Positions 6,976 through 41,611 are shown, counted from the stretch's first letter. The stretch is 64,000 nt of DNA from Cyanophora paradoxa CCMP329 (GCA_004431415.1 QPMI01000217.1:61556-125555), one strand, 5' to 3'. Numbers and translations are program-made. The notes: generated by a model from the sequence alone, not told the origin.

Positions 6976-8649
6976 AAGCTGGAGGAGCCGGAGGTTGCGG
7001 CGAGGGCTTACCGCTCGGGCCGGCGCGCCGACGAGAGCGAGGCGCAGGGAAACCTGGTCGCCGGCGTGCAGAACCACATCGCCGCGGCGCTCCTCTACCT
7101 GCAGGCGGCGGAGGCGGCCTCCTGCGACGGCCGCGTCGCCGACTCGCTCAAGGTGCCTCGAGGCGGTCGCCTGACCGCCCTCCGCCCGCCCGTGCGGCGT
7201 TGCAAGAGCGCGGGAGCAAGCTTTCTTGCGGCAGGTACTCGCGTACGGGCACGCGCAGCGGGCGCAGAACCTCAAGCGCCGCGTCGAGCTCTTCGTCGAG
7301 GCGGAGCGCCGCGTGCGGGCCGCCCCGCCGTCCCGCGCCGTGCACGGCAGCCGACGCGTCTCCTTCGCGCAGCGGGCTGCAGCGCAGGGGGCGGGGACGC
7401 GGGCGGTGACGGTGACGTCGGGGATCCGCGTGGAGGACCCGCAGTTCGTCCTCAGCGCCTCCGTCTCCCTAACGATGCCGGGCGTGCCGAGCACCAGCCC
7501 CGCTCCGCCGGCCGCGAGCGCCTTCCTCCACGTCGCCGCCGCGGGATCCGCGGGGCCGGCGGCGGAGGCGGCGGCGGACGAGGAGTTGCTGATCGAGTGG
7601 GCGGGCCCCGCGGCGGCGGCGCCCGAGGCGGCGGAGGCGGAGGCGGCGGGGGCGCCGTGGGGCCGCTTTATTCAGGCGGCAAACCGCCTCCTCGCCGCCA
7701 TCCCGCCCCTCTACCGCGCCCCGGCCCGCGCCGGCCCGCCGCCCGCCGCCGGCCCCGCACCCGCCCGACCCCGCAGCGTGCGCGCCCAGCGGCTCCACCC
7801 CAGCTCGCCCTTGATCCCGTCACAGCAGCCCCACCCCCAGCGGCGGCGGCGGCGGCGCCCTCGGGGGACGGGGAGGTCGCTCAGGTGAGCCTCGTCCTCC
7901 TCCCCTCCCTCCCTCCCTCCACCCTCACAGCGCGCCGGGCCAGCTGCGGGAGAGGTGGCGCGGCTGCGGGGGGCGCTGGCGGAGGCGGAGGGGCGGCTGG
8001 CGGCGCTGGGCGGGGAGCACGCGGCGCTGCTCGCCGAGCGGCAGCGCCAGCGCGACGCCCTCCGCGCCTCCGTCCTCGAGTTCCGCAGGCGCTCTGGGCC
8101 CGGGCGGGGCGTGGGCGGGGCGCCTGGGCGGGGGCCTCAGCGGGGCGGGGCGGGCGCAGGAGGTGGCGGCGCAGGCGGCGAGCATGCAGGCGCTCCCGTC
8201 GCCCGCCGCCTCCGTCGCCTCGCTCGCGCCGGCCGCCGCGCAAGACCCGAGGGCGAGGCGGGCGGGGGGAGGGGCCCGGGCGGGGGCTCTGGAGGCGCGG
8301 GTGCGGGAGCTCGAGGCGGAGCGCGCCGAGCTCCTCAAGCGCAACCGTGCGCCCGCCTCCCGCGCGAGGCCGCGGCGGGGCGCCGAGGCGGGCGGCAGGG
8401 GCGCAGGAGGAGACCATCCGCCGCTACCGCGAGAAGTGGGAGCAGGCGCGGCGGCCCCGCCCGCCCCACGTCCCCGCCCGCCGACCGCCCCGCGCACAGC
8501 TGAAGGAGAACGCGCGGCGGCGCAAGGCCGGCGGGGCGGCGGCGGGGCCCGAGGGCCCGCCCGGGCTCCCCGGCCCCAGCACCTCCGCCCCACCCGCCGC
8601 CCCCGCGACATCGGCCCCCGGGGCCGCCCCCGCCGCCCCACGGCCGTGA
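6976..8649 (+). CDS. NRBF2/Atg38-like protein (N-terminal MIT-like domain, C-terminal coiled coil), multi-exon; no in-frame ATG found
   Basis: AYRSGRRADESEAQGNLVAGVQNHIAAALLYLQAA...DSLK|VLAYGHAQRA resembles the NRBF2 MIT helix pattern. The C-terminal IRRYREKWEQ|LKENARRRK resembles fungal Atg38-type tails. Recognised from memory only. Confidence 0.6.
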   Translation, partial: KLEEPEVAARAYRSGRRADESEAQGNLVAGVQNHIAAALLYLQAAEAASCDGRVADSLKVPRGGRLTALRPPVRRCKSAGASFLAAGTRVRARAAGAEPQAPRRALRRGGAPRAGRPAVPRRARQPTRLLRAAGCSAGGGDAGGDGDVGDPRGGPAVRPQRLRLPNDAGRAEHQPRSAGRERLPPRRRRGIRGAGGGGGGGRGVADRVGGPRGGGARGGGGGGGGGAVGPLYSGGKPPPRRHPAPLPRPGPRRPAARRRPRTRPTPQRARPAAPPQLALDPVTAAPPPAAAAAAPSGDGEVAQVSLVLLPSLPPSTLTARRASCGRGGAAAGGAGGGGGAAGGAGRGARGAARRAAAPARRPPRLRPRVPQALWARAGRGRGAWAGASAGRGGRRRWRRRRRACRRSRRPPPPSPRSRRPPRKTRGRGGRGEGPGRGLWRRGCGSSRRSAPSSSSATVRPPPARGRGGAPRRAAGAQEETIRRYREKWEQARRPRPPHVPARRPPRAQLKENARRRKAGGAAAGPEGPPGLPGPSTSAPPAAPATSAPGAAPAAPRP

Positions 8650-23084: not shown

Positions 23085-23816
23085 CGACGCCGCGCGCCCG
23101 ACTGCTCGTATCGATGCTGGTGCTCGACGGCTGCAGCGACGCGACGACTGCAGCGACGGCTGCGGCGACGCTCTGGCCATGGAGTATCCCTCCTCGGCCA
23201 GTTCGCAACTGAACACAAGTCCCGCGTCCGACGCAGTCAAGAGGAGAAAGCAACCGGCAACAATGGCGCCCAGGGCCTTGCCAGTGAAAGCCGCGCGTCG
23301 ATTCGCGCCGACCAAGCCGGCGCCCGAGTCTGAGTCGTGCGTCGCCCCGAGGCGCACGCTCCACGTTGCCGCGCTGAGGCACCGGAGCGCAGCGAGTCTG
23401 ATTACGATGATCAAGAGAACCGCGACAATGGCACTGGCCAGATTGACCGAACCGGTGCGTTCGCCCAGCATGACTGCCGCGGGAGCATTCACTTTGAGGC
23501 GCCGCGCTGATTCCCGGCCCGCGCAGCCAAGGGCGGCTCCACGAGCATTCGTAACTTTCACTCCAGCGACGGTACGCAGTCGCGTGCCTGCCCAGTCGCC
23601 GATGCGCATGCGAGCGTTTACCTCGAGGCCTAGGCGCCCGGCGCGCGCCGAGCTGATTCCGAGTCCGCGCACAGTCGACAAGGACTGGAGCTCCCACATC
23701 ATTCACAAGCGACCCAAGTCCCCTTGTGCGTTCCTTCCGGCCGCCCGCGGGAGCATTCGCCTCGAGCTTGCGCCGTCGACGCGCGCGCGCATGCGCATGC
23801 TTGGTTCAAACTGACG

Positions 23817-25144
23817 ATGAACGCAGATGAGAAGTGGACTCGGAGGGAGGTAGATTTGGTCAAGGATCTCGTCGAGCTTTACGAAGCGGAGACGTCGACG
23901 CGGGAGCACGCGGAGAGCTTCGAGAGCTTCGTGAGCCGCTGCAAGACGCGGGGCGACATCAATCCCAGGATCCAGGTCCGCCCGCCCGAGCGCGAGCCCC
24001 GCTCGAGAAAATGCGGAGCTGATCCCGCGCCGCAGGATCTCTGCCAGGAGCGCCCGCTGACGGCGATTAGAAGGCACGCCCAGGACCTGGGCCTCACCGC
24101 CGCGCTGCCGAAGAAGCGCGCCGCGGCCGCCCCGAAGACGGGCGCCGGGTCCGCCCCCGCCAAGAAGCGGAAGCGTGCGCTCATGCCCCTCGCGGCCGCT
24201 GCCAGCGCCCCTCACGCCGCACTGGCAGGCGGCGCCGGGGCCTCCAACTCCAACTCCCGCGCCCAGCAGGCGCCCGCTCCGGCCCCGGCGCCGGCTGCCG
24301 TCGCGCCCGCTCCGCAGACGGTCGCCCCGCCGCGCACCGCCCCGGCCCCCGTCGACCGCCGCGCCCTGACGGCGCCTCCTCCGATCTTCGTGCCCCGGGA
24401 TAAGGCAGCGCCTGCGGGCGCAGGCCCCGCCGGCAGGGGTCCGGAGGCCGCCCCCGCGGCTCTTGCCACGGCGAGCCAGCAGCGGGGCAAGCAGCCGGCG
24501 CCCCAGCCGGCGGCCGGCGCGGCGGCGGGCGCGGCCCCCGGCGGGGCGCCGGGGGCGCGGGCGGGGCCTGCGGCGGGGCCGAGGCAGAAGCTCGCCGTCC
24601 GCTTCGATGTCCCCTCCGACGACGACGAGGAGGACGCGAAGGAGGAGGAGGAGGAGGAGGAGGAGGACGCCCCGGGCCCGGCCTGCGCCCCGCCGGCGAA
24701 GGCGGCCCCCGAGGGGGTCCCGGGCGCGCGGCGCCGGTCCCGGCCACGCGCCCGGCCAAGGAGAAGGCCCCACTTCGCGCCCCGGCCCCGGCCCCGGCCC
24801 CGGCCCGCTCCGGGCCCCGGCCCCGGCCCCCGCCCCGCCGGTGCCGGTGGAGGAGGAGGAGCGCGTGCCGGGCTCGCAGGGCTTCGAGGGGCCCGCCCAG
24901 GCCCACGCCTCGGCCGCCCCGCAGGCCCCGGCGGCCGGCCCGTCGAACGCCGGGGGCGGCCCGGCGGGGGTCCCCCAGCGCTGGCGACGGGGTTGGGAAC
25001 CTCGCCTTCGACATCGAGAAGGAGGCGCTGCTGATGCGGGCGGCGGCGCTGCGCTCGCGGGCCGCCGCGGAGGCCCAGCTCGCCCACGCCGACACCCTCG
25101 CCGCCCGCGCGGCCGAGCTCCGCGCCAGGCTGCTCGCCCCCTGA
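23817..25144 (+). CDS. Protein with an N-terminal Myb/SANT-like helix, a Pro/Ala-rich middle, an acidic tract and a C-terminal coiled coil
   Basis: MNADEKWTRREVDLVKDLVELYE; intron near 23975-24035; frameshift(s) in the GC-rich middle; ends ...EKEALLMRAAALR...LLAP*. Confidence 0.5.
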
Positions 25145-25682
25145 GCTCGCCCGGCCAGGCCCCCCTCTCCGCCGCCTCAAGGCCTCCGACGCCCGTCGGA
25201 CCCCGAGCGCTCCGCCGCGGCCCGCGCCGGATGCACTGGTGGTCGTGATCTCGAGCGGCCATCATGGCATGGCTTCCGCCGGCCGCTTTCGAGCGGATCT
25301 TCGTGCCAGTCTCCTGTGAATCTTATATATTGAAGGCTCCATGAAGTTGTTTCTTTTTCAGTATTCTATTCAAGTTAGCGTTTCTTTGGCGCCTCGTTCC
25401 TTCGAGTTACGTGTTGGTGCAAATCGAGTGTAGTGTTAGTGCATGCGCACACCTTCCTTTCTAATACGTTGTTATTGTACATCGAGTGTTTCGGCGGGGG
25501 AGGGGCGCGAGCCCTTGCCCCCTTTACGTAAGCCGTGCTCATGGTCGCGATTAATATTCTAGGTGTCACAGAGTGTATGCCTGGTCGATGTATTAAAATA
25601 TCGCAGGTGTATAGGTTCGAATTCGCGGTGAGCAAGTTAAGTAAAGAGCGCAAAGACAAACTGATTGAAAGGAGGTGTCGAA

Positions 25683-28600
25683 CTACTGGTGAAAGAAAAG
25701 GAGCAAAGCGCGAAGAGGAAAGCTACTAGACTTAGACGCGGGATCCGGAGAAGCGGGGCGCTGGGAGTAGGCCTGGTACTTGGGGGCGCCGGTGTCGGGC
25801 AGGAGGGCGTAGGCGGCGACGCTGTCGTAGAGCCAGTGGGGGTTCACGAACTCGGCGGCCTCCAGCAGCGCGCGGGCCCCCGGGGGCAGCGCGAAGAGGG
25901 GTACGACGGCGTCCAAGTCCACCGCGAGGTCGCCCATCCCCGCCTCGAACGTCTCCGGCGATCGGATCACGTACGCAGCCCGCGCCCTCGTCGGCTCCGG
26001 CTCGAGGTTCGAGGTTCGAGCTCAAGGCCTCGGGCGCGGCGCGGGGGGCGAGGAGCGCGCCGCCGCCGGCCTCGACGAGGGCGGCGAGCTGCGCGCGGGA
26101 GGGGCCGTGGCCCGTGAAGCGGCCCCAGAGGGCGAAGAGAAGGCCCTCGAAGAGCCGCGGCCCCTGCTCGCCATCGCAATCAGGGTTCGGGCGGCGGGCG
26201 CTCGAAGCGGCCAGCAAGGGCGGCGGGCGTGCGCACCCCGGCCTCGAGGGCCGCGCGGGACTTGTGGGCGGCGCCGCTGTTGCCGCCCGATTTCCTGGTG
26301 TCGCCCTTGAGCTGGAACTGAGCCTCCGGCATCCACGTCCCGTGCGATTGGCAAGAGCGCACCCCTGCGCATGCGGCCCGTCAGCTCGAGCGGGCGGGGT
26401 CGAGGGGCGCGCGACATGGGAGACGCGGAGCGCACAGCCCTCAGAGACGACCCAGGCCCCGCGGGCGATTCCGCACAGGTATCGGAAGGTTGGGCGGCAA
26501 CGCCCGTTCTCCTCGTTGCAGACCACGTGAGTCACGTCGGGGCTCCAGCGGTCCGCGACGCGCGCCCCGCCACGCGCCTCCACCAGTTCCTTCAGCTTTT
26601 TCTGCGGCGGGCCTCATGATCAGGAAACGTAGGCAGGAAAAACGAACGAAATGAAGGCCCACTTTGTCATTGTCTGTGAGACAGCTGGTGAGGATGACGA
26701 ACGGGCGCGCCGGTTCGTAATCAGATGGCGTGTCATGGATCCGGTCCGAGCGTCGCCCTGTGAGACCAAATGGGAGAGCCGAGGAGGAGGCCGAGGAGGA
26801 GGAGAAGGAGGCGGCGGGCCTTTTGCCGCGGGGCGCGGAGGCGGCAGGAGGCTGCGAAGCAGGGGGCGGCCGCGGGGGGCGGGGGGCGGGGGCCGGGAGT
26901 CGGCCGGAGGCGGCCGGCCTCCCCTTCGGTCCGGGCCGGGCGCCGCGATCGCTGCCGCTGCCGCTACCCTCCCCCACAGAGCCGGCCCGCCTCTTCTGCT
27001 TGCCCTTCTCCTTTCTCGAGCCCCGGCCCCGGCGCGCCAGAACCGCCGGGGCCTGTCCGCTGTGCTCCGCGCAGTCGATGACGTGCTCTTCCTGCAACTC
27101 GAGTTCGCCGATCACGAGGCGGCCCGCGCGCGCGAGAAGCTCAAGGGAAATCGTCTCACCTCGTACATGGTGGGCCGCTTCGCCTGCTCGGCCATCGAAA
27201 GCCTCCGGACGCAGGGGTAGTGGTAGCGACGGCCGCAGCGGTCCGCCACGCAGCCGATGGCCGCGCCGGGCTGCCTGCAGGCCTCGTAGCTGCATTTCTG
27301 TGCAGGGTGTCGAAAACAGAGGAGGACCGGTGCACGATCAAGCGCACGATCTTTCGTGAGCGGTTGAACTCTTCGGCGAACATGGTGTACCCCCCCGTCC
27401 CGTCCTCGGCCACGTCGGGCGCCCACTCCGCGCAGTTCTCGTGCACGTAGAGTCCGATAACGTGTTTCTGCGAGTCCGCGTCAGCCGACGGTGAAGTCTC
27501 GACCGGGATCTCGGGGATGGAGTCAGGCTCGCCTTGTTGGTGGGGTCTAGCACCGCGTACGGGCCGAGCCCCTCGCCGCAGAGAGGGTCGGGGTCCTGCC
27601 CTTCCTTGGGCAGCGCGCCTCTGCAGAAGCAGCAGTAGCGCGTGGGGTCGTCTTCGTCCCCCTCCTCGTCGCTCGGCACCCACTCTTCGTCCTCGTGCAC
27701 AGACTCCTCGCCGCTCTCCACCCCCCCTCCGAGTCCACGTCCGCGAACATGAGGAAGGCCCAGTCGTAGTGCTTCAGGGCGCCCTCCCAGCGCTCCTGGA
27801 GGTGCCCCTGCAGGCTCCGGGTGAAGCCCTGCCGCCTGAAGAACTTGGACGCCGTCGCGTCCGCGAACGTCGCGAGCCAGCGGATGCCCTGCTCCCGCGC
27901 CTCGCGCCTGCCGATCCATCGAGATCAGTCCACGCTGGGAAGACGGATGGGAGGCCTAGGGGCCGGGATCTCACCGGAGCCCGGCGAGGAGGCCGGGGCC
28001 GATGCCGCGGCGGCGGGCCTGCTCCGCCACGCAGAGGAACGTGATCTCGGCGATGCGGCGCCGAGGCATCGGCTTGTAGACGACGGCCCCGACGACCTCC
28101 TTGGAGGGCGCCGGCCCCAAGTCGAACAGGCACCGGTGGAATCTGCGGGGCGGTCGTGAGGAGCTCGAGTCCGGAAAGCAATCTGCGGGGCGGGGCGCAC
28201 GGGTCGGCGATGACGCCCTCCACGTAGGGCTTCTTCAGGCCCGGGAGGGCGAGGTGGACGAGCGCCGCGACCTCCGCCGCCCGGGCCTCCCTCTCCGCTC
28301 CCCCCAGGTCCCCTAGACGGTGGAATGGGCGAGGGCGCTCGGGCGAGGCCGCCGCGGGCGCAGGGGGCGCGAGAGGGGCGGTCGTCGCCGGGCGGGGGGC
28401 GGCAGAAGCGGTGGGGGGTGCGCCGGCGTGCTCCGGGGCCGCGCCGGTGTCGGCCGCGCCGCTCGTCGCGGGCGCGGAGGCGTTGCCCAGCGGCCGGAGC
28501 GGCGCCCGCGCGGCGGCGGGGTCGTCGCGCGCCTTCTTTGCCGGCCGCTTGTTCGGGGAGCCCTCTTCGCGGTTCTCCTTCTCGGCGTCGGCGAGGAGTG

Positions 28601-29330
28601 GCGCGGCGCCGTCCCCGGCGCTGCGGACGGCCTCGCGGACGCCCGCCGTCCGTGACGACCGCGGCCCGGCGGCCACCGCGCCGGCGACCGCGCGGCACGA
28701 CGGCTCCAGTTCCATCTGCGCCAGGCCTGGAGAGAGTCAGTCGCGGGGGCGCGCGCCACGAGAGCACCGACGGGCGAGGGCACCTGCGGCGGGCCGCTCT
28801 GCGTCCTGCCGCCCTTCCGGCGGGTCAGCCGGACACCGCCGCGTGCGGAGGCGGCGAGGAGCTTCCTCCTCCACGTCGCCGATCGCGTGCGAAGGGCCCG
28901 GCCCGCCTGCCGGATCGTCGGCGTCAGCTCCGATGCCGGCGGGACGAGACCGACTGCTCACCGACGACCGCCTCGCTGCCGCGCGCAGCGGAGCCGCTCA
29001 CAGCCATCTCCAGCTGGAGGAACGCGCAAGCGATGTCGCGCATGAGCTGAACACCGCGCAGCGAGCCCCGGTCGAACTCGGCGCGGCAGCTGCGAGCGGA
29101 AGGTCGTGATCAGCGCTCCGACGCGAGCTTGTCGACTTTCTTCGATCAAATTGCGCGTGCGCACTTCGGGCACGTCAGCGTGTCGCAATGCGTTGGGCGC
29201 TCGATGCAGACGCTGCGCGAGCCGTCGGCCGCCGCGCTGCAAGGGCGGGCCGCGGGGTCGGAGGCACGTACGTGCAGCATAGGTGGTTGCAGGGTATATT
29301 GAGAACGTCTCGCACGACCACGTGACTGCT
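25683..29330 (-). CDS. BRCA1/BARD1-like protein: RING - GCN5-type acetyltransferase - extended PHD - tandem BRCT; first exon not identified
   Basis: RING: IPCNHLCCT|VCIE..TCPN|CRAEFDRGSLRGVQLMRDI. HAT: LPGLKKPYVEGVIADP, AEITFLCV..RRRGIG, TFAD..FFRRQGF. ePHD: CCFC..VHENCAEWAP..CSYEAC..GAAIGC..CGRRYHYPC..CAEH. BRCTs: WSPDVTHVV..TFRYLCGIARGAWVV, GPRLFEGLLFALWG, PHWLYDSVAAY. Confidence 0.82.
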
Positions 29331-29716
29331 AGCCGTGTGGGCGCGCGCTGCGGTCAGCCTGCGGAACGACCGCATGCGCAGGCCGCGGGGCCTCGCCGCT
29401 CAGCAAGTAGATGCAAACCTCACGGCCAGCCGTCACACGGCGTGAGGTTTGAGGTTTGCAATTGCAATTGATCATGAGGTCACCGGGTTTAAAATTTCGT
29501 GATGCATGCGCATGTGCACGTGATCATGACTCAGTGATCATGAGGTTTGAGGTTTTGAGGCATGCGCATGCGCGCGCGCCACGATGTGCGCATGCCGCAG
29601 TGCCGGCGCCGCCCCCCGGTCGACGTCCCGAAAGGGTACGGGGGCGCGAAGGTAAGGGGGCACTGTCGCTGTCGTCGCTGGAGCGCCGAGCGGAAAGCAT
29701 CGAGCGAGCGAACAAG

Positions 29717-29890
29717 AGTAGTATTCCGGTACCCCCGAGCGTACCGGAACGCGCCCGTCTCCAGCCGACGGCAGCGCCAGCGCGCGATGCGCACTCAGCA
29801 GTAGGCCGGTCGAGCACAGACCGTCCAGCTTGCCCGCCCTCCCCGCCCGACGCCCATGACCTGATGAATGTTGCTGCAGACAGCCCGCAC
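29717..29890 (+). repeat. Direct repeat copy 1 (174 bp; partner at 38229-38402)
   Basis: AGTAGTATTCCGGTACCCCC...GACAGCCCGCAC occurs at both sites with 3 mismatches. Confidence 0.95.
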
Positions 29891-31134
29891 GGCCCTCCCA
29901 TGAACCTCAGAGCATCCTCGGATGTCTCACGTGCCTTAAGCCTGCAGTCGAGCGGCGTGCTCGCTCAGGACACGGCCTCTTGCCCAAATCGCCTGCCGGA
30001 CATGCTCGCCCGAACCTCTGGACTGAATCGCTCGCCCTCTTCGCGTGCCCGACTACATGTTGGATCGATATCACTATCCCGTGCGCTAGCTAACCTGTGC
30101 CCGCGCCGCGCCGCACAGGTCACGCGCGTGCGCACGTCATCAGCGCCAACGGTCACTTGGCGCCGAAACCTCGGAGTCGCTTCCAAGCGTCTCTGGGGCT
30201 CTTGTAGAATCGCCTGGACTAGTAGGCGCATGCCGAGCCGCGCTAGAGACGCCGCGGGACGACCACGGCGAACGAAGGGGGGGTATAGATCACACTCTCG
30301 GCCCCTTCCGTACGCGAGCAGCTCTAGCTCTGCACGCCCGGCACTGGCGTTCACGCACGCCAACCCCTTCCAAGCACTCGTGGCCATGCGGGACGACGCG
30401 ATGCCTTCGGGAAGGGAAGGCGGGTCCGAGTGGCGCGGCGACCCACGTTCTCCGCCGCCGGACCCACAGGGCAAGCGTAAAGCAGATCAGCAGCAGCCGG
30501 TGGCTCGCACGCCGGCGAAGCGATCGCGCGCCGAAGCCGGTGGCTTACCTAACAACGTGAGCACGAACGCGCAGTTCTCCCGCCTGTACACAGCAAGTCT
30601 GATCTGCTCCCAACCACCGCAGGCCCTCGAACGGTCCCGCCAGTCCAGATCACAGGAACCCGAAAGGCCCTCGATCGCTGAGCAACGGGTGCCGCACGCG
30701 ACTCCTCACCAAAGATCGTTTCCTCGCGCTCATCGCCGACCATCGCAGAACGCGGCGCGCTCGGATGCCGGCTCCAGGATGAAGCCTCTAGGCCACCCGA
30801 CCGCGAACGTCGGGGTGCGCGTGTCGCGGCGTCCTCCCTTAGCCGCAGTGCACCGCCAACACGCGACGCAGCAATGGACGATGGAGACGGCGCGCGGGCG
30901 TGTCAGCTTCGGGGCATCGATAGCTGCGCCCGCGTCGCAGTGCACAGTCTTTTCTGGCAAGACAGAGGCAGGATTCTTCGTCGTGTGCCCCGAGCAGCAG
31001 TCACTAGCTTCTCAGAAAGCTGCAGGCTCAGTAGATCTAGGTCCCTGTCTAGATCTAGTCGCAATGCATGGCCTCCCTCGTACTCCCCTCCTAGCCAAAC
31101 GCCCGCCGAGCGAGAGGGACATACTGAGGGGACA

Positions 31135-34100
31135 ATGAACAATAACGTGAACACGGCGGGGGGGGCGCAACAGGGCCGGGCCGCGCCCCGTATAATTGAC
31201 CTCTTCCCGACGGACCTCTTCACCCACGCAAAGCTCGGCGCGCGGCCGCGCACGCTGAAGCGCCAATTCGACGCTAAGCAGGCCTGGCGGATCGCCACCT
31301 GGAACGCACGGTCGTGCTCGAGCGTGAACCACGTCGGCCACCTGCAAAAGTACATGAAGGACTGGGGATCAGCGTCATGGGCGTCCAATCACTTAACTGT
31401 ACCGCCGCGGCAGCCCGAGCGATGAGGCAGGCCATCGACGCCGGCGTCATGCTGACCTCGGTCCACCCTAGCGCGCCCCGCCGCGCCGAGCCGATGAAGA
31501 AAAAGAAGAAGAAGAAGAAGAACGACCCAAGGAGCCGTCTGCGCGCGGGTCAGGCGTTGCGCTGCTGCTGTCCGCGGACATGGCGAAGCACTGCTTCCGC
31601 ACCTACTCAATGCCGGGGCGAGTCGTCGGGTGCGAGCTGCGCTTCGCGGACAACGTGCAGGTCTTCGTAGCGAGCGTGTACCTGCCGCCGGGAGAAAGCC
31701 GCACCTCAGCGAACACGGAGAGCGCCCGGATCATCGAGTACATGCGAAACAACATCCTCGCCGACTGGGCGGCCCGACACAAGGCGCACCTGTTCCTGCT
31801 CGGTGACTTCAACAGCTGTGTCTGCCCGGCGACCGGCCGGATCCGCAACGCGCGCTACGCCAGCTCACACGAACCGGAGCATCGCTGGTGGAGAGAGCTT
31901 CTCAGCGAGAGCGCCTGGAACCTGCGCGACGCTGCGAAGCTGGCGGGCACGGACGATCAGATCACCTTCATCTTCCCCGACAAACAGCGCGGGCCGGACG
32001 AACCTGGGCCTGAGCCGCGAGGGATCACTGCGACGGGCCACCTGCGGACAGCTGCTCGGCTCGACTACATTCTCCAGTCCACGGCAGCCGGGGCCGGACT
32101 CCGGGCAGTTCAGGTATCCCCCCGCCACGCGCCCTACGAGTCCGACCACTTCCCGGTACTCGCCGAGTACGACAGGCGCGGACTCGGCCTCCAGTTCTCG
32201 TCCGGCCCGCCGCCCGCCCCCCAGCGCCCGCCTAGGTTCCAGTACGGAAAGCAAGCCGCTCTGACGAAAGTTCGGTTCAAGGAGCTCCTGGAGGCCAGCC
32301 TGAGCCGGACCAGCCCCGGCGCCGAATGCGTGGCAGCAATCCTCGACGAAATCGAGCGGGACGCCGCCGCGCCGCCGCAGCAGCGCCTGACCCGCCTCAG
32401 CGCCGCGCTCGACGGGGCGCTCGATCGAGTCAAGGAGATCGGCCAGTCCGCGGACTTCGGCATGTACACGCCCGCACGCAAGACCCAAAAGTTCTCTCGC
32501 AGGGGCCGGCCAGAGTCGGCGCTGCTCACGCGCGCGCAGGAACTCCGGCGCACCTGGGCGGCGGCGCGACACGGACCCGACTCCACGCCTCGCCGAGTGA
32601 GACACGCGCTATCGGACCTCCGCCTCGCCATCTCAAACCATAACCGTCGCATCTCGCAGCTCCCCGTGGAGAAACGGTCCGGCTATAGTCTCCTCCCGGC
32701 TCCACCCCCCTCTCCTCCTTTCTCAGCGCCGCAGCCCCGCTGGCTCGAGCACTACGATGTGTTCCTGGCATGGGTCTCGGCGCTCGACAAGAAGGTCGAC
32801 CTGCACATCCGCGGCTTCGAGACCAAGCGCATCCTGGCGAGCCGCGAACGCACGCGCCGCATGTTCAAAGTTGACCTCGCGCAGCACCTCCGACTGGTCC
32901 TGGAGGCGCCGGCTCGCCGAGGTATCACATCTTTCTCGTTCTTCGATGGGCTCGAATACAAAGTGTATGACTCCGAAGAGCAAGTCTGTCCCTTTGCCCG
33001 CCAGCACATGCACGCCTGGACCAAGCGCAGAGCACCCCTAACGGCCTGCCTCGACCCGCTAGGTCTCCCGCTAAGCGAATGCGCCCGGGACCCCCGCCTC
33101 TGGCAGCGACTGCACGCGCCGCGGGACGACATAGATGCAGCCCTATTCGATAGCCTACTGAATCGCACGGAGGACACGGAGCTGGGCAGAATCATTGGCT
33201 CGCTGAGAAACGGGGCGGCAGGGCCCTCGGGCCTCTCGAATGAAATGATTAAGATGCTGTGGAGTGACCCTGTCCTCCCCAGGAAAACGCTCGAAGAGCT
33301 GAAGAAAGCGGGCCTGGACACCTCGGCCCTCCAGTCCGAAAACAGAACGCCAACCTGCAGGCGGCTTCTACTGGTGACGGTCAACCTGATTCTAGAGCTC
33401 GGAGCTGTTCCTGAACCTCTGCTCTACGGAAATATCTGCCTGATCCCGAAGAGCGGAGAATGGGACGGGCACCCTGACAACGTCAGACCGATAACACTGC
33501 AAGAATGCGCCCTGAAACTGGTCACAGCTCTTCTCACGGATAGACTCTCCAGGATCATCCGAAAGAACGAACTACTGAAGGCGCAAACTACGCCTTTACA
33601 CGTGGTAAATCGACGGACGAGCCGCTCTACATGATGCGCGCATTACTTGAAGATGCGAAACAGTTCTCTAAACCGATCTACCTGCTCCTCCTTGACATCC
33701 GTCGAGCCTACGACAGCGTGAGCTGGCCCAGCATGGCGATGGCCCTCCGCCGCCTCCGCATCCCTGAGAAGTACATTCAGCTGTACGAACAGCTCACGAC
33801 GCGGCGCAAGGCATCGGTCCTCACCGGGTACGGCCCCACCGAACCGTTCGATGTCGAGTGCGGGCTTCCCCAGGGGGTACGGAATCGCCTATCCACTGGC
33901 TCATCTTTTACGATGTCTTCCTTACGGCCCTGCGCGAAGTCAGCGCGGCGGAGGGTACAACATACCGCATGGGGCCCGGGATCGCACCTCGCCCGGCCCC
34001 CCCGCCAGCTCACCGCCTCCGGGCTCACCTCCCCGACGTTGACTCGCCAGGGCAGGCCTACGCGGACGACACCGTGCTCATCAGCTCGTCCGCGCGGGGG

Positions 34101-37100
34101 GTACAACTGCATGCGGACCTGGTATCGGAATTCTTCTGGATCCACGATATCGCCCTGAACGCGAAGAAGACTGAGTTCACTTATAACAACGTATCTCCCG
34201 AGCCCAAACCGCCCCTCCTTGGCCCGCCCGGGGCCAAGGAGCGTGCGCACCACGTCCTGCCCCCGACGAAGCCCTTCAAGTTCCTGGGGGTCTGGTTTAC
34301 CGCGGACCTAAATTGGAGGCATCAGTTCGAAGCGGTCTACACGATGGCGCAGACCGCCTGCGCGATCCTAAAGAAAAAGAAGCTCACCGCAAAGGAAGCA
34401 GTGTACATCGTGAACAGCGTACTCATCCCGCGCATCACGTACGCCTGCAAGGTTGTCGCGTACACCGAGCGCCAGTGCGCCCAGATAGATACCCTGTGGA
34501 TGACGCTAGTCAAGCATCAGGCGCGCCTCCGCCGCTCGGCGCCCAACGCCCTAATATGGAGCCGCGGATTCTATGGGCTGAAGCGCCTGGCAGACGAGCA
34601 GCTCGCCATACACGTCCTAGACGAAACAATCCGCGCGAACCACCCGACGCTTCGCCCGTATCTCCTCCACCGCGTGTTCGCGGCGCAGGAAAAGCTATGC
34701 CTTCCTCTCCCCCCGTACTGCTATCCGAACCTAGATCCAGGCCCGACCCTCCGGCGCGATCATCTAGCCCTCGCTATAGCCCGAAATATGAATGCGGAGG
34801 GCTACATCCTCGACTCGGGAAGGTCGCACCTGACTCCGGCCCTCCCGCATCCTCGACTCGAACGAAGATTCGTCCTCACTACGCTTCTACCGCCAGCCCT
34901 CCTCCGCAGCGCCGCGCCGTTCCTGTGGGAACACGATCTGCTGACGGCGGCGGACATCACGGGCCCGGACGGGCGCACCGTTCTGGACTGGGCGAGCCTC
35001 TGGGGCAGCGGCCGCGTCCGCCAGCGTCTCGGCCGGGCGCCGTCGTGGTTCCCAGACTTCCTCCGCGCAATCTGCGAGCCCGTCCCGCCGAGGAAGCTCC
35101 CACGCTCCCTGCGCTTCCCCATGCACGTGCTCAAGCAGGGGGCGCGGCGCCAGCAGACGCTTTTCGAAGCGAACCTGATGAGCCCGCCGTACGTGGAGGG
35201 ACAGTTCGCCTGGCACCCGCAGGGCTACCTGACGCGCATCGTTAGCAAATGGGAGGAGCGCGATGAAGACGATGGGCGCCTCCGCGTGTACGTCCGCCTG
35301 GAACATTGGATCTGGCGCGACCGCACGATCCGCGACGGCGACGGGGAGGGCGCCGCCCGATTCTACAAGTGCACGATGCTCAAAGATGAGTGCGATGCGC
35401 GGTACACGACGGACGATGCGACAGCCAAGGCGGCGCGCCAGCGCTGCGACCACTCTGAGCCGGAGTCAGGCGCCTGCCAGTGGACCGAGGACTCTATCCA
35501 CATTCACCCGGCCCGCCTCCTCGAGCTAATCACCCCGGCGACCCGCACGCGGAAGCACGAACCGTACGCGGTTGTGAAGCTAGAGAGTCAGGAGTGGTGG
35601 ACCGAGTTCCGCACGACGCTCTTCCTTCCTCCGTGGGAACGCGATTGGGATTACGAAGCGGATCCCTCCGCGCAGCCCCAGCCGCCGTCGGGCTACAAGC
35701 AACGCCGCCCGGGTACAGTGCCACCGCGCACCGCACCGCCTGTATACCCGGATCGCCAGCCTCTCGAGCACTTTCTCATCGACCCGGAGCCCCTAGCCGA
35801 CCCGTTCTGGAACCTCGTAGCCCAGGAGCTTCGCCGCGAGGAGCTCCCCGCTGCCCGGCCCCCGAGAGTGGCGGCGACCGATGCCAGCACAACGGGGTTC
35901 GGATCCGAGGCGGCGCTAACGGCTTACGCGGGTGTCTGGACCCGGGACCACGAGCAGAACGCGGCGCACTCCCCAGCGGATCGGCAGCGGGAAGCCCAGC
36001 GCCGCAGCGAAGGTATACAGCTGAAAAACCAGCTGCTGCGTGAAGCCGATGCATGCGCAGAAGATGACGCCCCACAGGCGGCGGCCCTGCGGGAGCTCGC
36101 CGAAGCCATCCCCACGGACGGCAGCGACTTCTTTGTCGCCCCGTGCCCGGGCACTGTCAACAACAACAAAGGCGAGCTCCTCGCCGTCCTCACGGCCTTC
36201 TTAAAGTCGCCCGAGGGCTGCACAGTTAAGACAGACAGCTCGACGGCGATGTCACTCATCCGCCGCTCTGTCCTGCACCGCGCTGACTCGACGGTCCGCA
36301 GCGGCCTTCGCACCAACTTCTCGCACCATCTGCGAGCGGCTGCAGAAGTCCATCAGCACCGCAGAGCCCTCGCCGCCGCCGCCGGAAGGCCACCCGCCGA
36401 GGTCCGCGTACAGAAGGTGAAGGCGCATCAGAAAGAGTACACTGACCGGCCTGCGCCTGTCGCCCCGGCAGAGCCCGAGACGGACAGCGATGCGGACGAC
36501 TCCGGATCGTACGTGTCCTACCTCTCCGCCCCGGACGACCTCCCCCCGAGCCCTCTGACGCCGAGCTTATCGCCAAATTCGGCGAGGGACAAGGGGTGTA
36601 CGCCGGGCGCCCGAACCCGCTTTCGGGCGCTTATAACTACCTGTCCGAGCACATCCGTGCGCGCACTGCTCACCTCCGCCGCCGCGAGACTCGACGCATT
36701 CTCCACCAGATCGAACGTCAGACCCGCAAGGCGCGCCGGGAGGAACGCCAGCGCCGTCGAGACGCGCTCGCGGCTCTCGGGCCCCACGTTCCCGCCCTCG
36801 CCGGCCTCCCGATCGCCCAACGCATGGAGAGGGTACTGAATGATGCGTACGACCGGGATAACCACCGAGCCGACCGCCTCGCCGCAGCGGCGCTCGCCCT
36901 GCACCCCTGCGCCCCGTTCTCCAAGGTCTGCAGCGATGGCCACGGCCTCAATGCCTGGGCTGACGTCAAGAGCGCCACCTGGCAGGCAGATCCCGCAGTC
37001 GCATCCGACCCGCCGTCTCGGCTGCCGCAAAACGTGCATGGCTAGCACGGCGTGAGCCCCTCTTTCCCCCGGCGGGTTCGAGTTCGTCCTCCTCTTCTCA

Positions 37101-39299
37101 CCCCCCGCAGGAGCCTGGAGGGGTACGACTCCAGCAGAGCGTACCGCGTCGAGTCCGACCCCCGGCCCACGTCCGCGCCGTCTGCGAAATGCGTAACTTC
37201 GTGCGGCTGACGTCGCTTGAATCCTCGTGGCTCGGCGCCCCGGCCGACCGGGCACGGCTCGCGCGCGAATTCCGTAAGCAAGGCGCCTCCCGCGACGCGT
37301 CAGCCCCGTTCAATGCCCGCCTTGCGCAGCTCACCAAATTCAGCATGGAACTCGCGCCCCTCCTACCTGTCCGTGCCCGCGATGCCCCACACCTCTACGG
37401 CAACATCAACCCGCAAGGCCTGTGCGTACGCCCTGGGTGCGCTCGCGTCGCCGACGCCTCCGGCGGCCCCATCCCGGCACCCCCCTGGGCACCGAGGCGC
37501 GACCCAGGAGCCGCCGCAACCGCAGACCGCGACCCCCCGCCGGCGCTCCACAGCGCGAGTCAACCCGAGACCCACGACCACGCCTTCGGCCTTTGTTCGG
37601 CATCGCAAGCGGCCCGGCTCGCTATGCAATCCAAGATTTACAACCTCCTCCACACAACGATCACCACGCAGAGACTAAAGTCGGCCGCAACGAGGTACGA
37701 GCTCCCGGACGGCCTGAAGTCGGACGGCCTGTTCCTCCGCGACCTATTTCCCGCCTTCGCCCTCGCTGACGAACGCCGCTGGCGTCAGACCGTGCACGAA
37801 CGCTCGCGACCCGGGCCTGTACCCCCCACCTCCGTGCCTGTCTCTACGGCTCCCCCTCCCGCTGGCTGACTCACGGACAGGCCCTTTTCACCGACCTCTC
37901 GCACGACTCGCCCCGCCTGTCCGTCCGGCTGCTCCTCCCCCGCAGTCTGGTCCCGGCCCTCGAGTACCTTCATGTCCGCGCCCCCGCTGCTCGTAAATGC
38001 GCGAACGGGATCTTTGATGTACTTGTGACTGGGCTCCAGGAGATTTGGCAGGCGCGAAACTCGGACGTCCAAGCCTGGCAACGCCGCTGTGGCCTCAAGC
38101 GTCGGACTCTGACGGCGCCCCGACCCCCGCCAGCAACAGACCCCGCGGCCCGCCGAAGAAGCCGCCGCGCCCGGGAGACACGCCCCCAGCCGGACCCGAA
38201 CCCGCAGCCCGCACCCGTAGTGCCGGTCAGTAGTATTCCGGTACCCCCAAGCGTACCGGAACGCGCCCGTCTCCAGCCGACGGCAGCGCCAGCGCGCGAT
38301 GCGCACTCAGCAGTAGGCCGGTCGAGCACAGACCGTCCAGCTTGCCCGCCCTCCCCGCCCGACGCCCATGACCTGATGAATGTCGCCGCAGACAGCCCGC
38401 ACAGCCCGCCCACGAACCCCAAAGCAACCTCGCGATCGGACGCCCCTCCCGTGAGCTCAGCCCCCAGCTTAACCCTCCACCCCCCTGAGCCCCCAGCGCC
38501 TCACCCGCCGGAGCCCCGGCACTCACCTTGCCCGCGCCCCGACCCGCCCGCAGCCCAGCCCGTGGCCCCCCTGCCGCCGTCCGAAGAGGTCCGCCTAGCG
38601 TGGGCACAGACCCGACCCGGCCCGCTAAAGCCTGCGCAGGAAGTACTCCGACAGATCTCCTCGCCGCTGCTCGGTACCTCGGGCAGCATCAACGTCACGA
38701 GGAGATCTCTCAGTCGGCTCAATGGTGAGACCTGGTTAGACGACGAGACCGTTGTCTTCTACCTCGCCCTCCTCGCCCAACTCCCTGCCCTGGCCCGCCG
38801 TCCACTAATCTTTGACTCGCTTGAGTACCCTAACCTCTCCGCGCCAGGCCGAGGCCCCCAGCGCCTTCACAACAAGCTGGTAGCCCGCGGGTCAGCCCGT
38901 TCGACTTCGATGTTCTGCTCTTCCCGATCCACTCACCGGGCCACTGGACCTTCGCTGCGATCCACGTACGTGACCGTCGAGCCGAACTCTATGATGCCTA
39001 CAACCTGCCAAACGCAGAGTCGGCTCGAGAGAAGCTGGCCCCGATTCTCCGCTGGCTCCAGCTCGAGCGCCGGGAACGCAACCTTCCCTCAGACGACCCA
39101 CCGCCTGGCCGCTTGCATCGGCCACCAGGTACCCCATCCCGAACAACGGGACCGCTTCAGCTGCGGTGTAATTGTCTGTGCCCTGGCAGACGCCCTGGTC
39201 CGGGGCCAAGAAGACGCGCTCACGGACCCCAACTCGCCCTTCGATGGCAGCAGTCGGTGCTGCGCCCACTGGCGCAGCCTCATCCTCACCGAATCCTAG
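31135..39299 (+). CDS. LINE ORF2 polyprotein (APE-RT-RNase H-ZnF-Ulp1), broken by several frameshifts
   Basis: APE: IATWNARS, SVYLPP, LLGDFN, RLDYIL, SDHFPV. RT: RPITLQE, LDIRRAYDSV, GLPQG..SP, AYADD, FKFLGVW. RNase H: ATDAS, NNKGELLAV, KTDS, KVKAH, NHRADRLA. ZnF: CVRPGC..ETHDHAFGLC, then IWQARN. Ulp1: WLDDETV, GHW, YDAY, EQRDRFSCG. Confidence 0.9.
38229..38402 (+). repeat. Direct repeat copy 2 (inside ORF2, upstream of the Ulp1 domain)
   Basis: Matches 29717-29890. Confidence 0.95.
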
Positions 39300-39918: not shown

Positions 39919-41611
39919 CGCCGCGAGCGTGAGCTGGCCGCCCTCCGTGACTCGGCCGGCTTCACCTCCGCCCGCAACAATCTTCTTGCACGTGGAGACC
40001 GCGGAGCCCGACGTGCAGGTCCGGCTGTCCCAGCCCCTGATCCACAGGACCGCCCCCCCCGGACTCCCCGCCTCGGCGAGCCTCTCTGACCCCCCACACC
40101 GCCGTCACCCGTCGAACCGCAAGACCGGCCCCGCCCCGCCAGCCCCGCGCCCCCGCCGCCGGGCCCCCCACCACCGCCGGCACCGCCCTCGGTCCCCGCA
40201 CCACCGCCCCCATTCGAGTTTTCCGCCCGCGCGCGCCAGCTCCACCCGAGGCACTCCCGCCCCCAGACCGATGTCCCCTCTGCCTACACCCCCTGGGCCG
40301 TCACCGCCGCCTCCACCGAGCCCCGTACCCCCTTCTCTGCCCCCCAAGGTACCACCCCCTGCTCCACCGCGGCGACCTCATCCAGTCCCTCCTCATGCGC
40401 ATGCGGCGGTTGTGGGCGAGGACGGCGGCGGCCAACAGGAGGAAGAGCGAGGAGCGCTTCACGCTCGCCCGATCTCGTCGCTTGCACGTGAGCAGCCCCT
40501 TCCCCCTTCCACAGTGCCCCGCGTGACGAGAGGGGTGTAGATTTGATCGGTCCTCGCGCGGGCGGGGAGTGAGGATCGGATGCGCGGCAGTGCGCGCTCA
40601 CGCCCTGAAGCTGCGGCCCCTCGAAGGCCGGCCCCAACACGCAAAGGTGCGCCCGCGCCGTCCGCCCACGCGCAAGCGCGATTCCTGCGCTTTGCCCTGA
40701 CTGACCCGCCGGCGGCGCGGCAGGCGGCGCCTCCTTCCGGCGGGGACGGGTGTGCATCTCCACTGCAGGCGGCAGCTCGGCGAGGGGTGGCGCCTGCCGC
40801 CCCGCCCCGCCCCGCCTCCCCGGCCCCCTGCGCTCCGCGGCGAGGCGGCGCCCGGCGCGCGCCTCGGGGGCCACGGGCGGGGCCCGGCGCGGAGAGAACG
40901 GCGCCCGTTGCTCCGCCCCGCCACGCCGCCCGCCGGCGCCCGCCGCCCCGTCTCGCGCCTCGTCGCGCCCGCGCACGTGGCTGGGCCCCCCCGTCGCGCC
41001 CGTGCACGTGGCTAGCGCTGGGCTCTAGATCTCTCCCCGGCGCGGCCCGGAGCCGCCGCCGCGCCGCGCCGCGCCGCTCAGTGTCACAGTGTGGGGCACA
41101 CGTATATATATACGTGCACATGTACTCGTATTTCAATTAGAAAAAGCGGAAGTGAACGCGATGCACCAAGGCTCTGCGCGTGCTACAGTTCCGCAGCTGC
41201 GCCGTGCGCCGATCAGCACGGGCATAGGCGAGCAAAATAACCACTAGCTTCACAGATCGATACAAATCTGACATAAAGAAGTGGATGCATAGACCGAGGC
41301 TGGAATACGTAAACAAGAGGCCTAAGCGGTCGTGGGGGTGACGGGAATCTCACTATACTCAAAGAAACTTTGCAAAGAAAGGGGCCTCTTTATTTAAAGG
41401 GGTCGTGCTCGAAGGGGGGCAAAAAGCTGCAAACTTATCTGGTAGAAACTACAACTAGAATCGGGGGCTGCGCCCGCGAAAAGGGCGCGAAGAAAATTCG
41501 AACAAGATCCATGGGGTGCTGTTGTTTACAGGAGGGGCGCGGGCGTGCCTGGGCCCGGCCCGGCCCGGCCCGACGAGGCCGTCGGGGCGCGGGGCGGGGG
41601 CGGGGCGGGGG

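What the first reader, a model, noticed from the sequence alone, without database searches (positions are those of the whole stretch)
25683..29330. BRCA1/BARD1-like gene carrying an embedded GCN5-type histone acetyltransferase domain
Seen: splicing of short exons that the ORF track misses gives a C3HC4 RING (PCNHLCCT|VC...TCPN|CRAEFDRGSLRGVQLMRDI). Next comes a domain at ~28290-27750 with GCN5/PCAF hallmarks in order: LPGLKKPYVEGVIADP (cf. LPRMPKEYITRLVFDP), AEITFLCV (catalytic Glu retained), RRRGIG (acetyl-CoA loop), TFAD..FFRRQGF (cf. TYAD..YFKKQGF) and LKHYDWAFLM (cf. IKDYEGATLM). An extended PHD and two BRCT repeats follow. Established: RING-ePHD-2xBRCT is the architecture of plant BRCA1/BARD1, and I know of none carrying a HAT domain. 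Inference: one protein could couple phospho-mark or chromatin reading to both ubiquitylation and acetylation at DNA damage sites.
Basis: partly seen in the sequence, partly recalled or inferred. Interest (0 to 1): 0.88.

Follow-up and report, generated by a model that had tools for sequence, protein, structure and literature searches.

The report
Broken copy of acetyltransferase-bearing BRCA1 gene
The alga Cyanophora paradoxa has an unusual BRCA1-like DNA-repair gene with a histone acetyltransferase built into its middle, but the copy at this locus is recently broken (still transcribed, no longer able to make the full protein), while a second copy elsewhere in the genome looks complete.

Summary
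The domains are real; the intact one-protein reading fails at this locus. Minus-strand exons encode RING, a GCN5-type HAT (E 7e-17 to Tetrahymena GCN5, fold TM 0.86, catalytic Glu kept), ePHD and two BARD1/BRCA1-like BRCTs; seven introns are seen spliced in RNA-type runs. Three lesions were missed: (1) a one-base frameshift at a G7 run (27721-27727) just after the HAT, stop at 27547; (2) a 7-nt tandem repeat (26007-26020) shifting BRCT2; (3) no first RING Cys pair, with the probable first exon cut off by LINE DNA at 29717. Short-read DNA and RNA contigs carry both frameshifts. The public model (tig00000903_g5527) hides them with two introns that spliced RNA retains. The organism is Cyanophora paradoxa. 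A paralog about 50% identical (tig00020560_g11090, 1247 aa) has the complete RING-HAT-ePHD-2xBRCT chain; I found that chain in no other organism or paper. The scan noted this architecture before on other DNA of this genome (s1-511153, s1-539343). Verdict: a recently disabled duplicate of a real, lineage-specific BRCA1-GCN5 fusion. It shows the fusion is old and was under selection in two copies.

The parts
29717..29920 (+). LINE-internal DNA (96% identical to 38229-38432) abutting the gene's probable first exon
   Evidence: repeat D4; junction; depth jump and loose ends at 29717
29654..29716 (-). Remnant of exon 1: N-terminal RING-flanking helix plus first Cys; no in-frame ATG upstream, second Cys missing
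   Evidence: best six-frame match in the window to P0002 aa 1-26 (score 38, next 34, of 6390 windows). Weak score, right place and strand
29327..29653 (-). Former intron 1 or 5' region, packed with palindromic micro-insertion scars; the annotated ATG (29373-29375) lies inside one scar
   Evidence: 16 distinct scars in 29327-29716, shuffle mean 0.16
29272..29325 (-). RING exon 2 (third Cys, His, next Cys)
   Evidence: its introns are predicted, not seen in RNA
29165..29212 (-). RING exon 3
   Evidence: predicted
28962..29089 (-). RING exon 4 (last Cys and C-terminal flanking helix)
   Evidence: 21/40 identical to P0002; downstream intron spliced in X1
28784..28906 (-). Exon 5, linker
   Evidence: both flanking introns spliced in X1
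28201..28726 (-). Exon 6: low-complexity linker, basic NLS-like patch shared with P0002, start of HAT from about 28340
27975..28142 (-). Exon 7: HAT core with catalytic Glu (codon 28046-28048) and acetyl-CoA loop RRRGIG
   Evidence: upstream intron spliced in X2
27533..27907 (-). Exon 8: HAT C-terminal part, then acidic linker and first Cys pair of the ePHD in a different frame
   Evidence: contigs X4 27699-27908, X2 27533-27739, X1 27533-27711 show no intron inside
27721..27727 (-). G7 run: site of frameshift 1 between HAT and ePHD
   Evidence: DNA contig 26962-28395 and two RNA contigs cross it with no gap
27547..27549 (-). Premature stop of the RING-linker-HAT frame
27348..27467 (-). Exon 9, ePHD
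   Evidence: spliced in X1 and X4; 26/38 identical to P0002
27160..27297 (-). Exon 10, ePHD
   Evidence: Pfam zf-HC5HC2H; spliced
26663..27091 (-). Exon 11: end of ePHD, linker, start of BRCT1
26436..26601 (-). Exon 12, BRCT1
   Evidence: Pfam BRCT E 9e-7; introns predicted
26237..26364 (-). Exon 13, end of BRCT1 and inter-BRCT linker
   Evidence: downstream intron spliced in X1, X2, X4
25683..26163 (-). Exon 14, BRCT2 and ancestral stop; split over two frames
26007..26020 (-). 7-nt tandem repeat: likely site of frameshift 2 in BRCT2
   Evidence: spliced X1 contig 25937-26162 and DNA contig 25200-26039 carry it

Best explanation
The locus is a recently disabled, still transcribed duplicate (unprocessed pseudogene in the making) of a Cyanophora BRCA1-like gene with the order RING, GCN5 HAT, ePHD, tandem BRCT. 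Shown: the domains, the splicing, two frameshifts, the missing first RING Cys pair, and a complete paralog model. Inferred history: a GCN5 catalytic domain without bromodomain entered a plant-type RING-ePHD-BRCT gene; the fusion duplicated long ago (copies now about 50-60% identical per domain); both copies stayed under selection; this copy then lost its 5' end to LINE DNA and took two frameshifts. Inferred mechanism of the intact protein (about 0.55): BRCT and ePHD dock it on phosphorylated or marked chromatin at DNA damage, the RING adds ubiquitin, and the HAT acetylates nearby histone lysines with acetyl-CoA and the Glu general base, replacing recruitment of a separate SAGA-type HAT. This copy yields at most a low-level 485-aa HAT with a non-folding RING and no targeting domains, probably subject to nonsense-mediated decay.
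For: Frames. Lesions in short-read contigs: DNA contig 26962-28395 has no gap; RNA contigs 27699-27908 (X4), 27533-27739 (X2) and 25937-26162 (X1) have none. The out-of-frame segments align in register with the paralog on both sides of each break. The public model bridges exactly these two places with introns 27621-27683 and 26001-26076 that remove conserved residues and that spliced contigs retain. Recent decay: no in-frame stops and GC3 0.92 before against 0.90 after the first break (p 0.47); no palindromic scars in domain-coding sequence although four sit in introns. The species is reported as probably haploid (PMC6704402), which makes a hidden intact allele less likely. Paralog complete by Pfam; its RING is nearest BRCA1 and its BRCTs nearest BARD1/BRCA1.
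Against: All reads are assembled contigs, which drop rare forms. The RNA contigs cross the G7 run with only 22 and 12 letters on the short side, below the tool's 31-letter rule, so the DNA contig carries most of the weight, and it may be the data used to polish the assembly. 'RNA' is the tool's guess, though spliced joints support it. Frameshift 2 is fully crossed by one RNA run only. The exon-1 remnant match is weak. The paralog's DNA could not be fetched, so its intactness rests on a predicted protein. The runs may all descend from one isolate.
Confidence: 0.75

Rival explanations
1. The lesions arose only in the long-cultured laboratory lineage. In wild Cyanophora this copy is intact and pairs with the paralog through the RING helices as a BRCA1/BARD1-like heterodimer in which both partners carry a HAT. 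This overlaps with the best explanation on the present state and differs on how recent the loss is and what the gene did.
For: Few lesions, no stops, high GC3, all ePHD ligands and the HAT Glu kept. The BRCT1 phospho-pocket has diverged here (Gly to Cys, Lys to Arg) but is canonical in the paralog, as expected if partners specialised. RING-flanking helices are conserved.
Against: Three separate lesions and a scar-saturated 5' region suggest more time than decades of culture. No second strain or species was available; two metagenome scans found no relative.
Confidence: 0.2
2. The gene is alive as a shortened, free-standing HAT: translation from ATG 29375 gives a 485-aa protein with a basic nuclear signal and a whole GCN5 domain, and only the RING and the C-terminal readers have been dropped.
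For: The first frameshift falls just after the last HAT strand; the HAT exons are clean (GC3 0.98-1.00) and spliced; the model folds as GCN5.
Against: The HAT is no better conserved against the paralog than the out-of-frame ePHD and BRCT parts. The ATG sits inside a palindromic scar. The stop lies upstream of six introns. Contig coverage is low and patchy.
Confidence: 0.1
3. Recoding or minor splicing restores the long protein: polymerase or ribosome slippage on the G run, or occasional use of the two annotated introns, gives HAT-ePHD-BRCT products.
For: G runs are slip-prone (my own knowledge); both annotated introns have GT..AG ends and typical lengths; contigs hide rare forms.
Against: Two independent rescues are needed. 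The annotated introns delete the first ePHD Cys pair and a conserved BRCT2 helix, and three RNA runs retain the first of them. The RING would still be broken.
Confidence: 0.06
4. The frameshifts are assembly errors and the gene is intact.
For: The assembly is long-read based and lesion 1 is in a homopolymer (PMC6704402).
Against: Short-read DNA and RNA contigs from three studies match the window letter for letter at both sites; a 7-nt repeat is not a homopolymer error; the RING defect is separate.
Confidence: 0.04

Closest known systems
Cyanophora paradoxa tig00020560_g11090.t1 (P0002, EukProt EP00741)
   Same: Same domain order; 45-68% identity exon by exon, 57% over the HAT; shared basic patch in the linker.
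   Different: 1247 aa with all eight RING ligands, one frame and a canonical BRCT phospho-pocket; this locus is broken in three places.
Plant BRCA1 and BARD1/ROW1 (Arabidopsis)
   Same: RING, extended PHD in front of tandem BRCT (PMC11014961); RING nearest human BRCA1 and BRCTs nearest BARD1/BRCA1 among solved structures.
   Different: No acetyltransferase domain is described in them.
GCN5/PCAF (KAT2) histone acetyltransferases
   Same: Whole catalytic domain: E 6.6e-17 to Tetrahymena GCN5, TM 0.86, catalytic Glu and motif A loop kept.
   Different: About 27% identity; no bromodomain; the conserved Asn of the ADN motif is replaced; embedded in a BRCA1-like chain.
Arabidopsis BCP2 (At2g41450)
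   Same: GNAT domain and C-terminal tandem BRCT in one protein (PMC9791218, PMC11014961).
   Different: N-terminal GNAT, no RING or ePHD; function unknown; it did not appear among homologs, so the pairing is probably independent (not tested by tree).
Plant IDM1/ROS4-type PHD-GNAT acetyltransferases
   Same: Chromatin-reading PHD next to a GNAT HAT; nearest clusters by language-model features (0.96 and 0.89).
   Different: No IDM1_C Pfam hit; sequence and fold point to GCN5; PHD precedes GNAT in IDM1 (my own knowledge); no RING or BRCT.

Membership tests
Plant-type BRCA1/BARD1 | N-terminal C3HC4 RING with eight zinc ligands | tested here: not met
   Six ligands only; no splice path restores the first pair; no RING Pfam hit for P0001. 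Met in paralog P0002.
Plant-type BRCA1/BARD1 | Helices flanking the RING (dimer bundle) | tested here: inconclusive
   C-terminal helix in exon 4; N-terminal helix only as a remnant at 29678-29716 with no start codon.
Plant-type BRCA1/BARD1 | Extended PHD in front of the BRCTs | tested here: met
   Pfam zf-HC5HC2H; ligands kept. Present in DNA but out of frame with RING-HAT.
Plant-type BRCA1/BARD1 | C-terminal tandem BRCT of BRCA1/BARD1 type | tested here: met
   Best solved matches BARD1 and BRCA1, E 6e-9; BRCT2 is frameshifted.
Plant-type BRCA1/BARD1 | BRCT1 phosphoserine pocket (Ser-Gly, Thr-x-Lys) | tested here: inconclusive
   Ser and Thr kept, Gly to Cys, Lys to Arg; canonical in P0002.
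Plant-type BRCA1/BARD1 | All domains in one reading frame | tested here: not met
   Two frameshifts, stop at 27547-27549.
Plant-type BRCA1/BARD1 | E3 ligase activity, heterodimer formation, role in repair | not testable with these tools
   Needs biochemistry and genetics.
GCN5/PCAF (KAT2) | GCN5-type GNAT fold | tested here: met
   pLDDT 86 model; top 44 Foldseek hits are GCN5/PCAF, best TM 0.86. A GCN5 homolog was in the alignment used for the model; sequence alone gives E 6.6e-17.
GCN5/PCAF (KAT2) | Catalytic glutamate | tested here: met
   AEITF aligns with the FAE motif of GCN5.
GCN5/PCAF (KAT2) | Motif A acetyl-CoA loop Q/R-x-x-G-x-G | tested here: met
   RRRGIG.
GCN5/PCAF (KAT2) | C-terminal bromodomain | tested here: not met
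   No bromodomain in P0001 or P0002: a GCN5-derived domain, not a GCN5 orthologue.
GCN5/PCAF (KAT2) | Histone acetylation activity | not testable with these tools
   Needs an assay.
IDM1/ROS4 | IDM1_C-type GNAT domain | tested here: not met
   No PF23209 hit at E 0.01; only feature-level likeness.
BCP2 | N-terminal GNAT plus tandem BRCT without RING or ePHD | tested here: not met
   Domain order differs (PMC9791218). Direct sequence comparison with BCP2 not done.
Duplicated (unprocessed) pseudogene | Disabling lesions in a gene that keeps its introns | tested here: met
   Twelve introns between exons 2 and 14, seven seen spliced; two frameshifts and a broken 5' end.
Duplicated (unprocessed) pseudogene | Intact paralog in the same genome | tested here: met
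   P0002 complete as a protein model; its DNA not obtainable.
Duplicated (unprocessed) pseudogene | No functional protein made | not testable with these tools
   A 485-aa HAT-containing frame remains open.

The most novel reading that the evidence does not exclude
Glaucophytes of the genus Cyanophora run DNA-damage signalling through a BRCA1/BARD1-like pair in which both subunits carry their own GCN5-type acetyltransferase, so one complex reads damage marks and writes both ubiquitin and acetyl marks; the laboratory strain has lost one partner at this locus and is a natural mutant.
Probability: 0.2. Interest if true: 0.75.

Novelty: new variant of a known kind. Interest (0 to 1): 0.5.

Why it matters
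In animals and plants, acetyltransferases reach DNA breaks as separate complexes from BRCA1 (my own knowledge). A natural BRCA1-GCN5 fusion, kept with catalytic residues in two long-diverged copies, is evolutionary evidence that the two activities can work together at one site. It offers a single-chain protein on which coupling of ubiquitylation and acetylation can be tested; the protein to study is the paralog tig00020560_g11090. This locus also matters as a caution: the public 932-aa model is a gene-finder rescue of a broken gene and should not be counted as a second functional protein.

Tried and rejected
Homolog searches with the paralog's HAT, its ePHD-BRCT half and a two-sequence profile returned only the two Cyanophora proteins with HAT plus BRCT. 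These searches are word-based, length-limited, and twice capped at 8000 candidates; they even missed plant BRCA1, so they are weak evidence of absence. The exhaustive search of 1.84 billion representatives used one 53-aa exon and gave the two copies, three ordinary GCN5-like proteins and one spurious repeat protein. Two metagenome scans found nothing. No contig is on record for P0002, so no dN/dS. Paper searches found no BRCA1 with a HAT and nothing on Cyanophora BRCA1; one review was not held. Rejected: an intron or alternative acceptor in exon 8 that restores the frame; a mini-exon at 29437 with a GC donor supplying the first Cys pair (no usable acceptor); the gene's missing start at the far side of the LINE (no target-site duplication of 9 nt or more). 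No tree was built: too few GCN5 and BRCA1 sequences were retrieved. Joined searches used only the stored database proteins P0001 and P0002; exons were joined in a script only to follow frames and count codons to the first stop.

Full report
Observation. The region 25683-29330 holds a minus-strand gene of short exons in a 70% GC eukaryotic genome. Exon-by-exon Pfam scans give GNAT, ePHD and BRCT hits, and both HAT exons match GCN5 structures first. Three RNA-type runs show seven of the introns spliced (CT..AC or CT..GC on the plus strand), and the DNA-type run shows none. The locus is therefore a real, weakly transcribed, spliced gene.

Identity. A search of 1.84 billion representatives with one HAT exon returned this locus's own public model (P0001, 932 aa, tig00000903_g5527.t1) and a second protein (P0002, 1247 aa, tig00020560_g11090.t1), both from Cyanophora paradoxa in EukProt. 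P0002 has RING, Acetyltransf_1, zf-HC5HC2H and BRCT hits in that order. Its RING is nearest human BRCA1, including the flanking helices (E 1e-11), and its BRCT pair is nearest BARD1 and BRCA1. RING-ePHD-BRCT is the plant BRCA1/BARD1 layout (PMC11014961). The HAT of this locus matches Tetrahymena GCN5 at E 6.6e-17. Its model (pLDDT 86) superimposes on GCN5 at TM 0.86, with the catalytic Glu and acetyl-CoA loop kept and no bromodomain.

Following the RNA-supported splice sites, the RING-linker-HAT frame stops at 27547-27549. The ePHD begins in another frame of the same exon. Alignment to P0002 places the switch at a run of seven G at 27721-27727: the HAT frame matches before it and the ePHD frame after it. 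BRCT2 is split the same way around a 7-nt tandem repeat at 26007-26020. A short-read DNA contig covers 26962-28395 letter for letter and another covers the repeat. RNA contigs cross the G run without a gap in two runs (short-side flanks only 22 and 12 letters), and a spliced contig crosses the repeat in one run. The public model avoids both breaks by introns 27621-27683 and 26001-26076, which delete the first ePHD Cys pair and part of BRCT2. Spliced contigs retain the first in three runs and the second in one. The models came from AUGUSTUS, and the species is reported as probably haploid (PMC6704402).

The 5' end. The RING has only six ligands. The best match in the whole window to the first 26 residues of P0002 lies at 29680-29726 on the right strand (score 38 against 34 for the next of 6390 windows): a weak score in the expected place. 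It stops exactly at 29716, where a 204-nt piece of LINE-internal DNA begins (29717-29920, 96% identical to 38229-38432). No in-frame ATG precedes it, and no one- or two-intron path gives a complete RING. The order of these 5' events is not resolved.

Age of the damage. The two copies are only 45-68% identical per exon, so the duplication is old. Yet the ancestral frames have no stop codon, GC3 is 0.92 before and 0.90 after the first break, all ePHD ligands survive, and scars sit in introns and the C-terminal tail but not in domain-coding sequence. Both copies were therefore selected for a long time with the HAT in place, and this one was disabled recently. Its BRCT1 phospho-pocket had diverged (Gly to Cys, Lys to Arg).

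Mechanism. Shown: domain content, splicing, lesions, a complete paralog model. Inferred from known BRCA1 and GCN5 biochemistry: the intact protein docks on damaged chromatin through BRCT and ePHD, ubiquitylates through the RING and acetylates histone lysines through the HAT (about 0.55). This copy can make at most a 485-aa protein with a broken RING and a whole HAT, from a transcript whose stop lies upstream of six introns. Best reading: recently disabled duplicate (0.75). Rivals: strain-specific loss of a working heterodimer partner (0.2, overlapping the best reading), a live truncated HAT (0.1), recoding or minor splicing (0.06), assembly error (0.04).

Comparison and novelty. It works like plant BRCA1/BARD1 plus GCN5, but this locus fails membership as a functional BRCA1/BARD1 (incomplete RING, no single frame) and as a GCN5 orthologue (no bromodomain). 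HAT plus tandem BRCT is known in plant BCP2 (PMC9791218), and PHD plus GNAT in IDM1-type proteins. The four-domain chain turned up only in the two Cyanophora proteins and in no paper; those searches have limited reach. The scan reported the same architecture earlier on other DNA of this genome, probably the P0002 locus, which I could not verify. I rate the architecture a new variant of a known kind and this locus its broken second copy; interest 0.5.

Limits. Contigs only, no raw reads; no second strain; no DNA for the paralog; no tree.

Noticed in passing
window 29372-29627: Extreme density of palindromic micro-insertions (word, flipped word, word; with or without C and G): 16 in 390 nt against about 5 per kb in the gene's introns and 0.2 per kb in the LINE ORF. 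Why this spot is a hotspot is unexplained.
   Followed up: partly
window 29870-30700 (+): Abundant plus-strand spliced transcript (introns 30045-30118 and 30557-30622) in multicopy DNA at the 5' side of the LINE, head to head with the BRCA1-like gene; its promoter might drive the residual transcription of the broken gene.
   Followed up: no
window 29717-29920 and 38229-38432: 204-nt direct repeat, 96% identical, of LINE-internal sequence; the left copy forms the junction with the gene. No target-site duplication found.
   Followed up: partly
window 31580-39299 (+): LINE with an endonuclease-like ORF (weak Pfam Exo_endo_phos, E 0.002) split over several ORFs; subject of other findings.
   Followed up: no
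window 29414-29456: 11-bp hairpin and a twice-occurring AAACCTC tandem (29444, 29542); a similar GAACCTC tandem forms the BRCT2 frameshift.
   Followed up: no
window 25200-25935: A 1069-nt RNA contig at higher depth overlaps the 3' end of the gene and runs towards the convergent plus-strand gene at 23724-25034; possibly overlapping 3' ends. Strand not known.
   Followed up: no
window 40390-41050 (+): Intron-like GT..AG segment (about 40648-40724) and short coding-like pieces just beyond the LINE; may be a gene or gene remnant. It does not look like the missing 5' end of the BRCA1-like gene.
   Followed up: partly
window 27468-27532: RNA-confirmed GC-AG intron among otherwise GT-AG introns of 50-75 nt.
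   Followed up: yes
other piece of this genome (note s1-528712): A GCN5-like domain fused to a PARP-like domain was noted elsewhere; GCN5 domains may have been inserted into more than one DNA-repair gene in this alga. It did not appear in my homolog searches.
   Followed up: no
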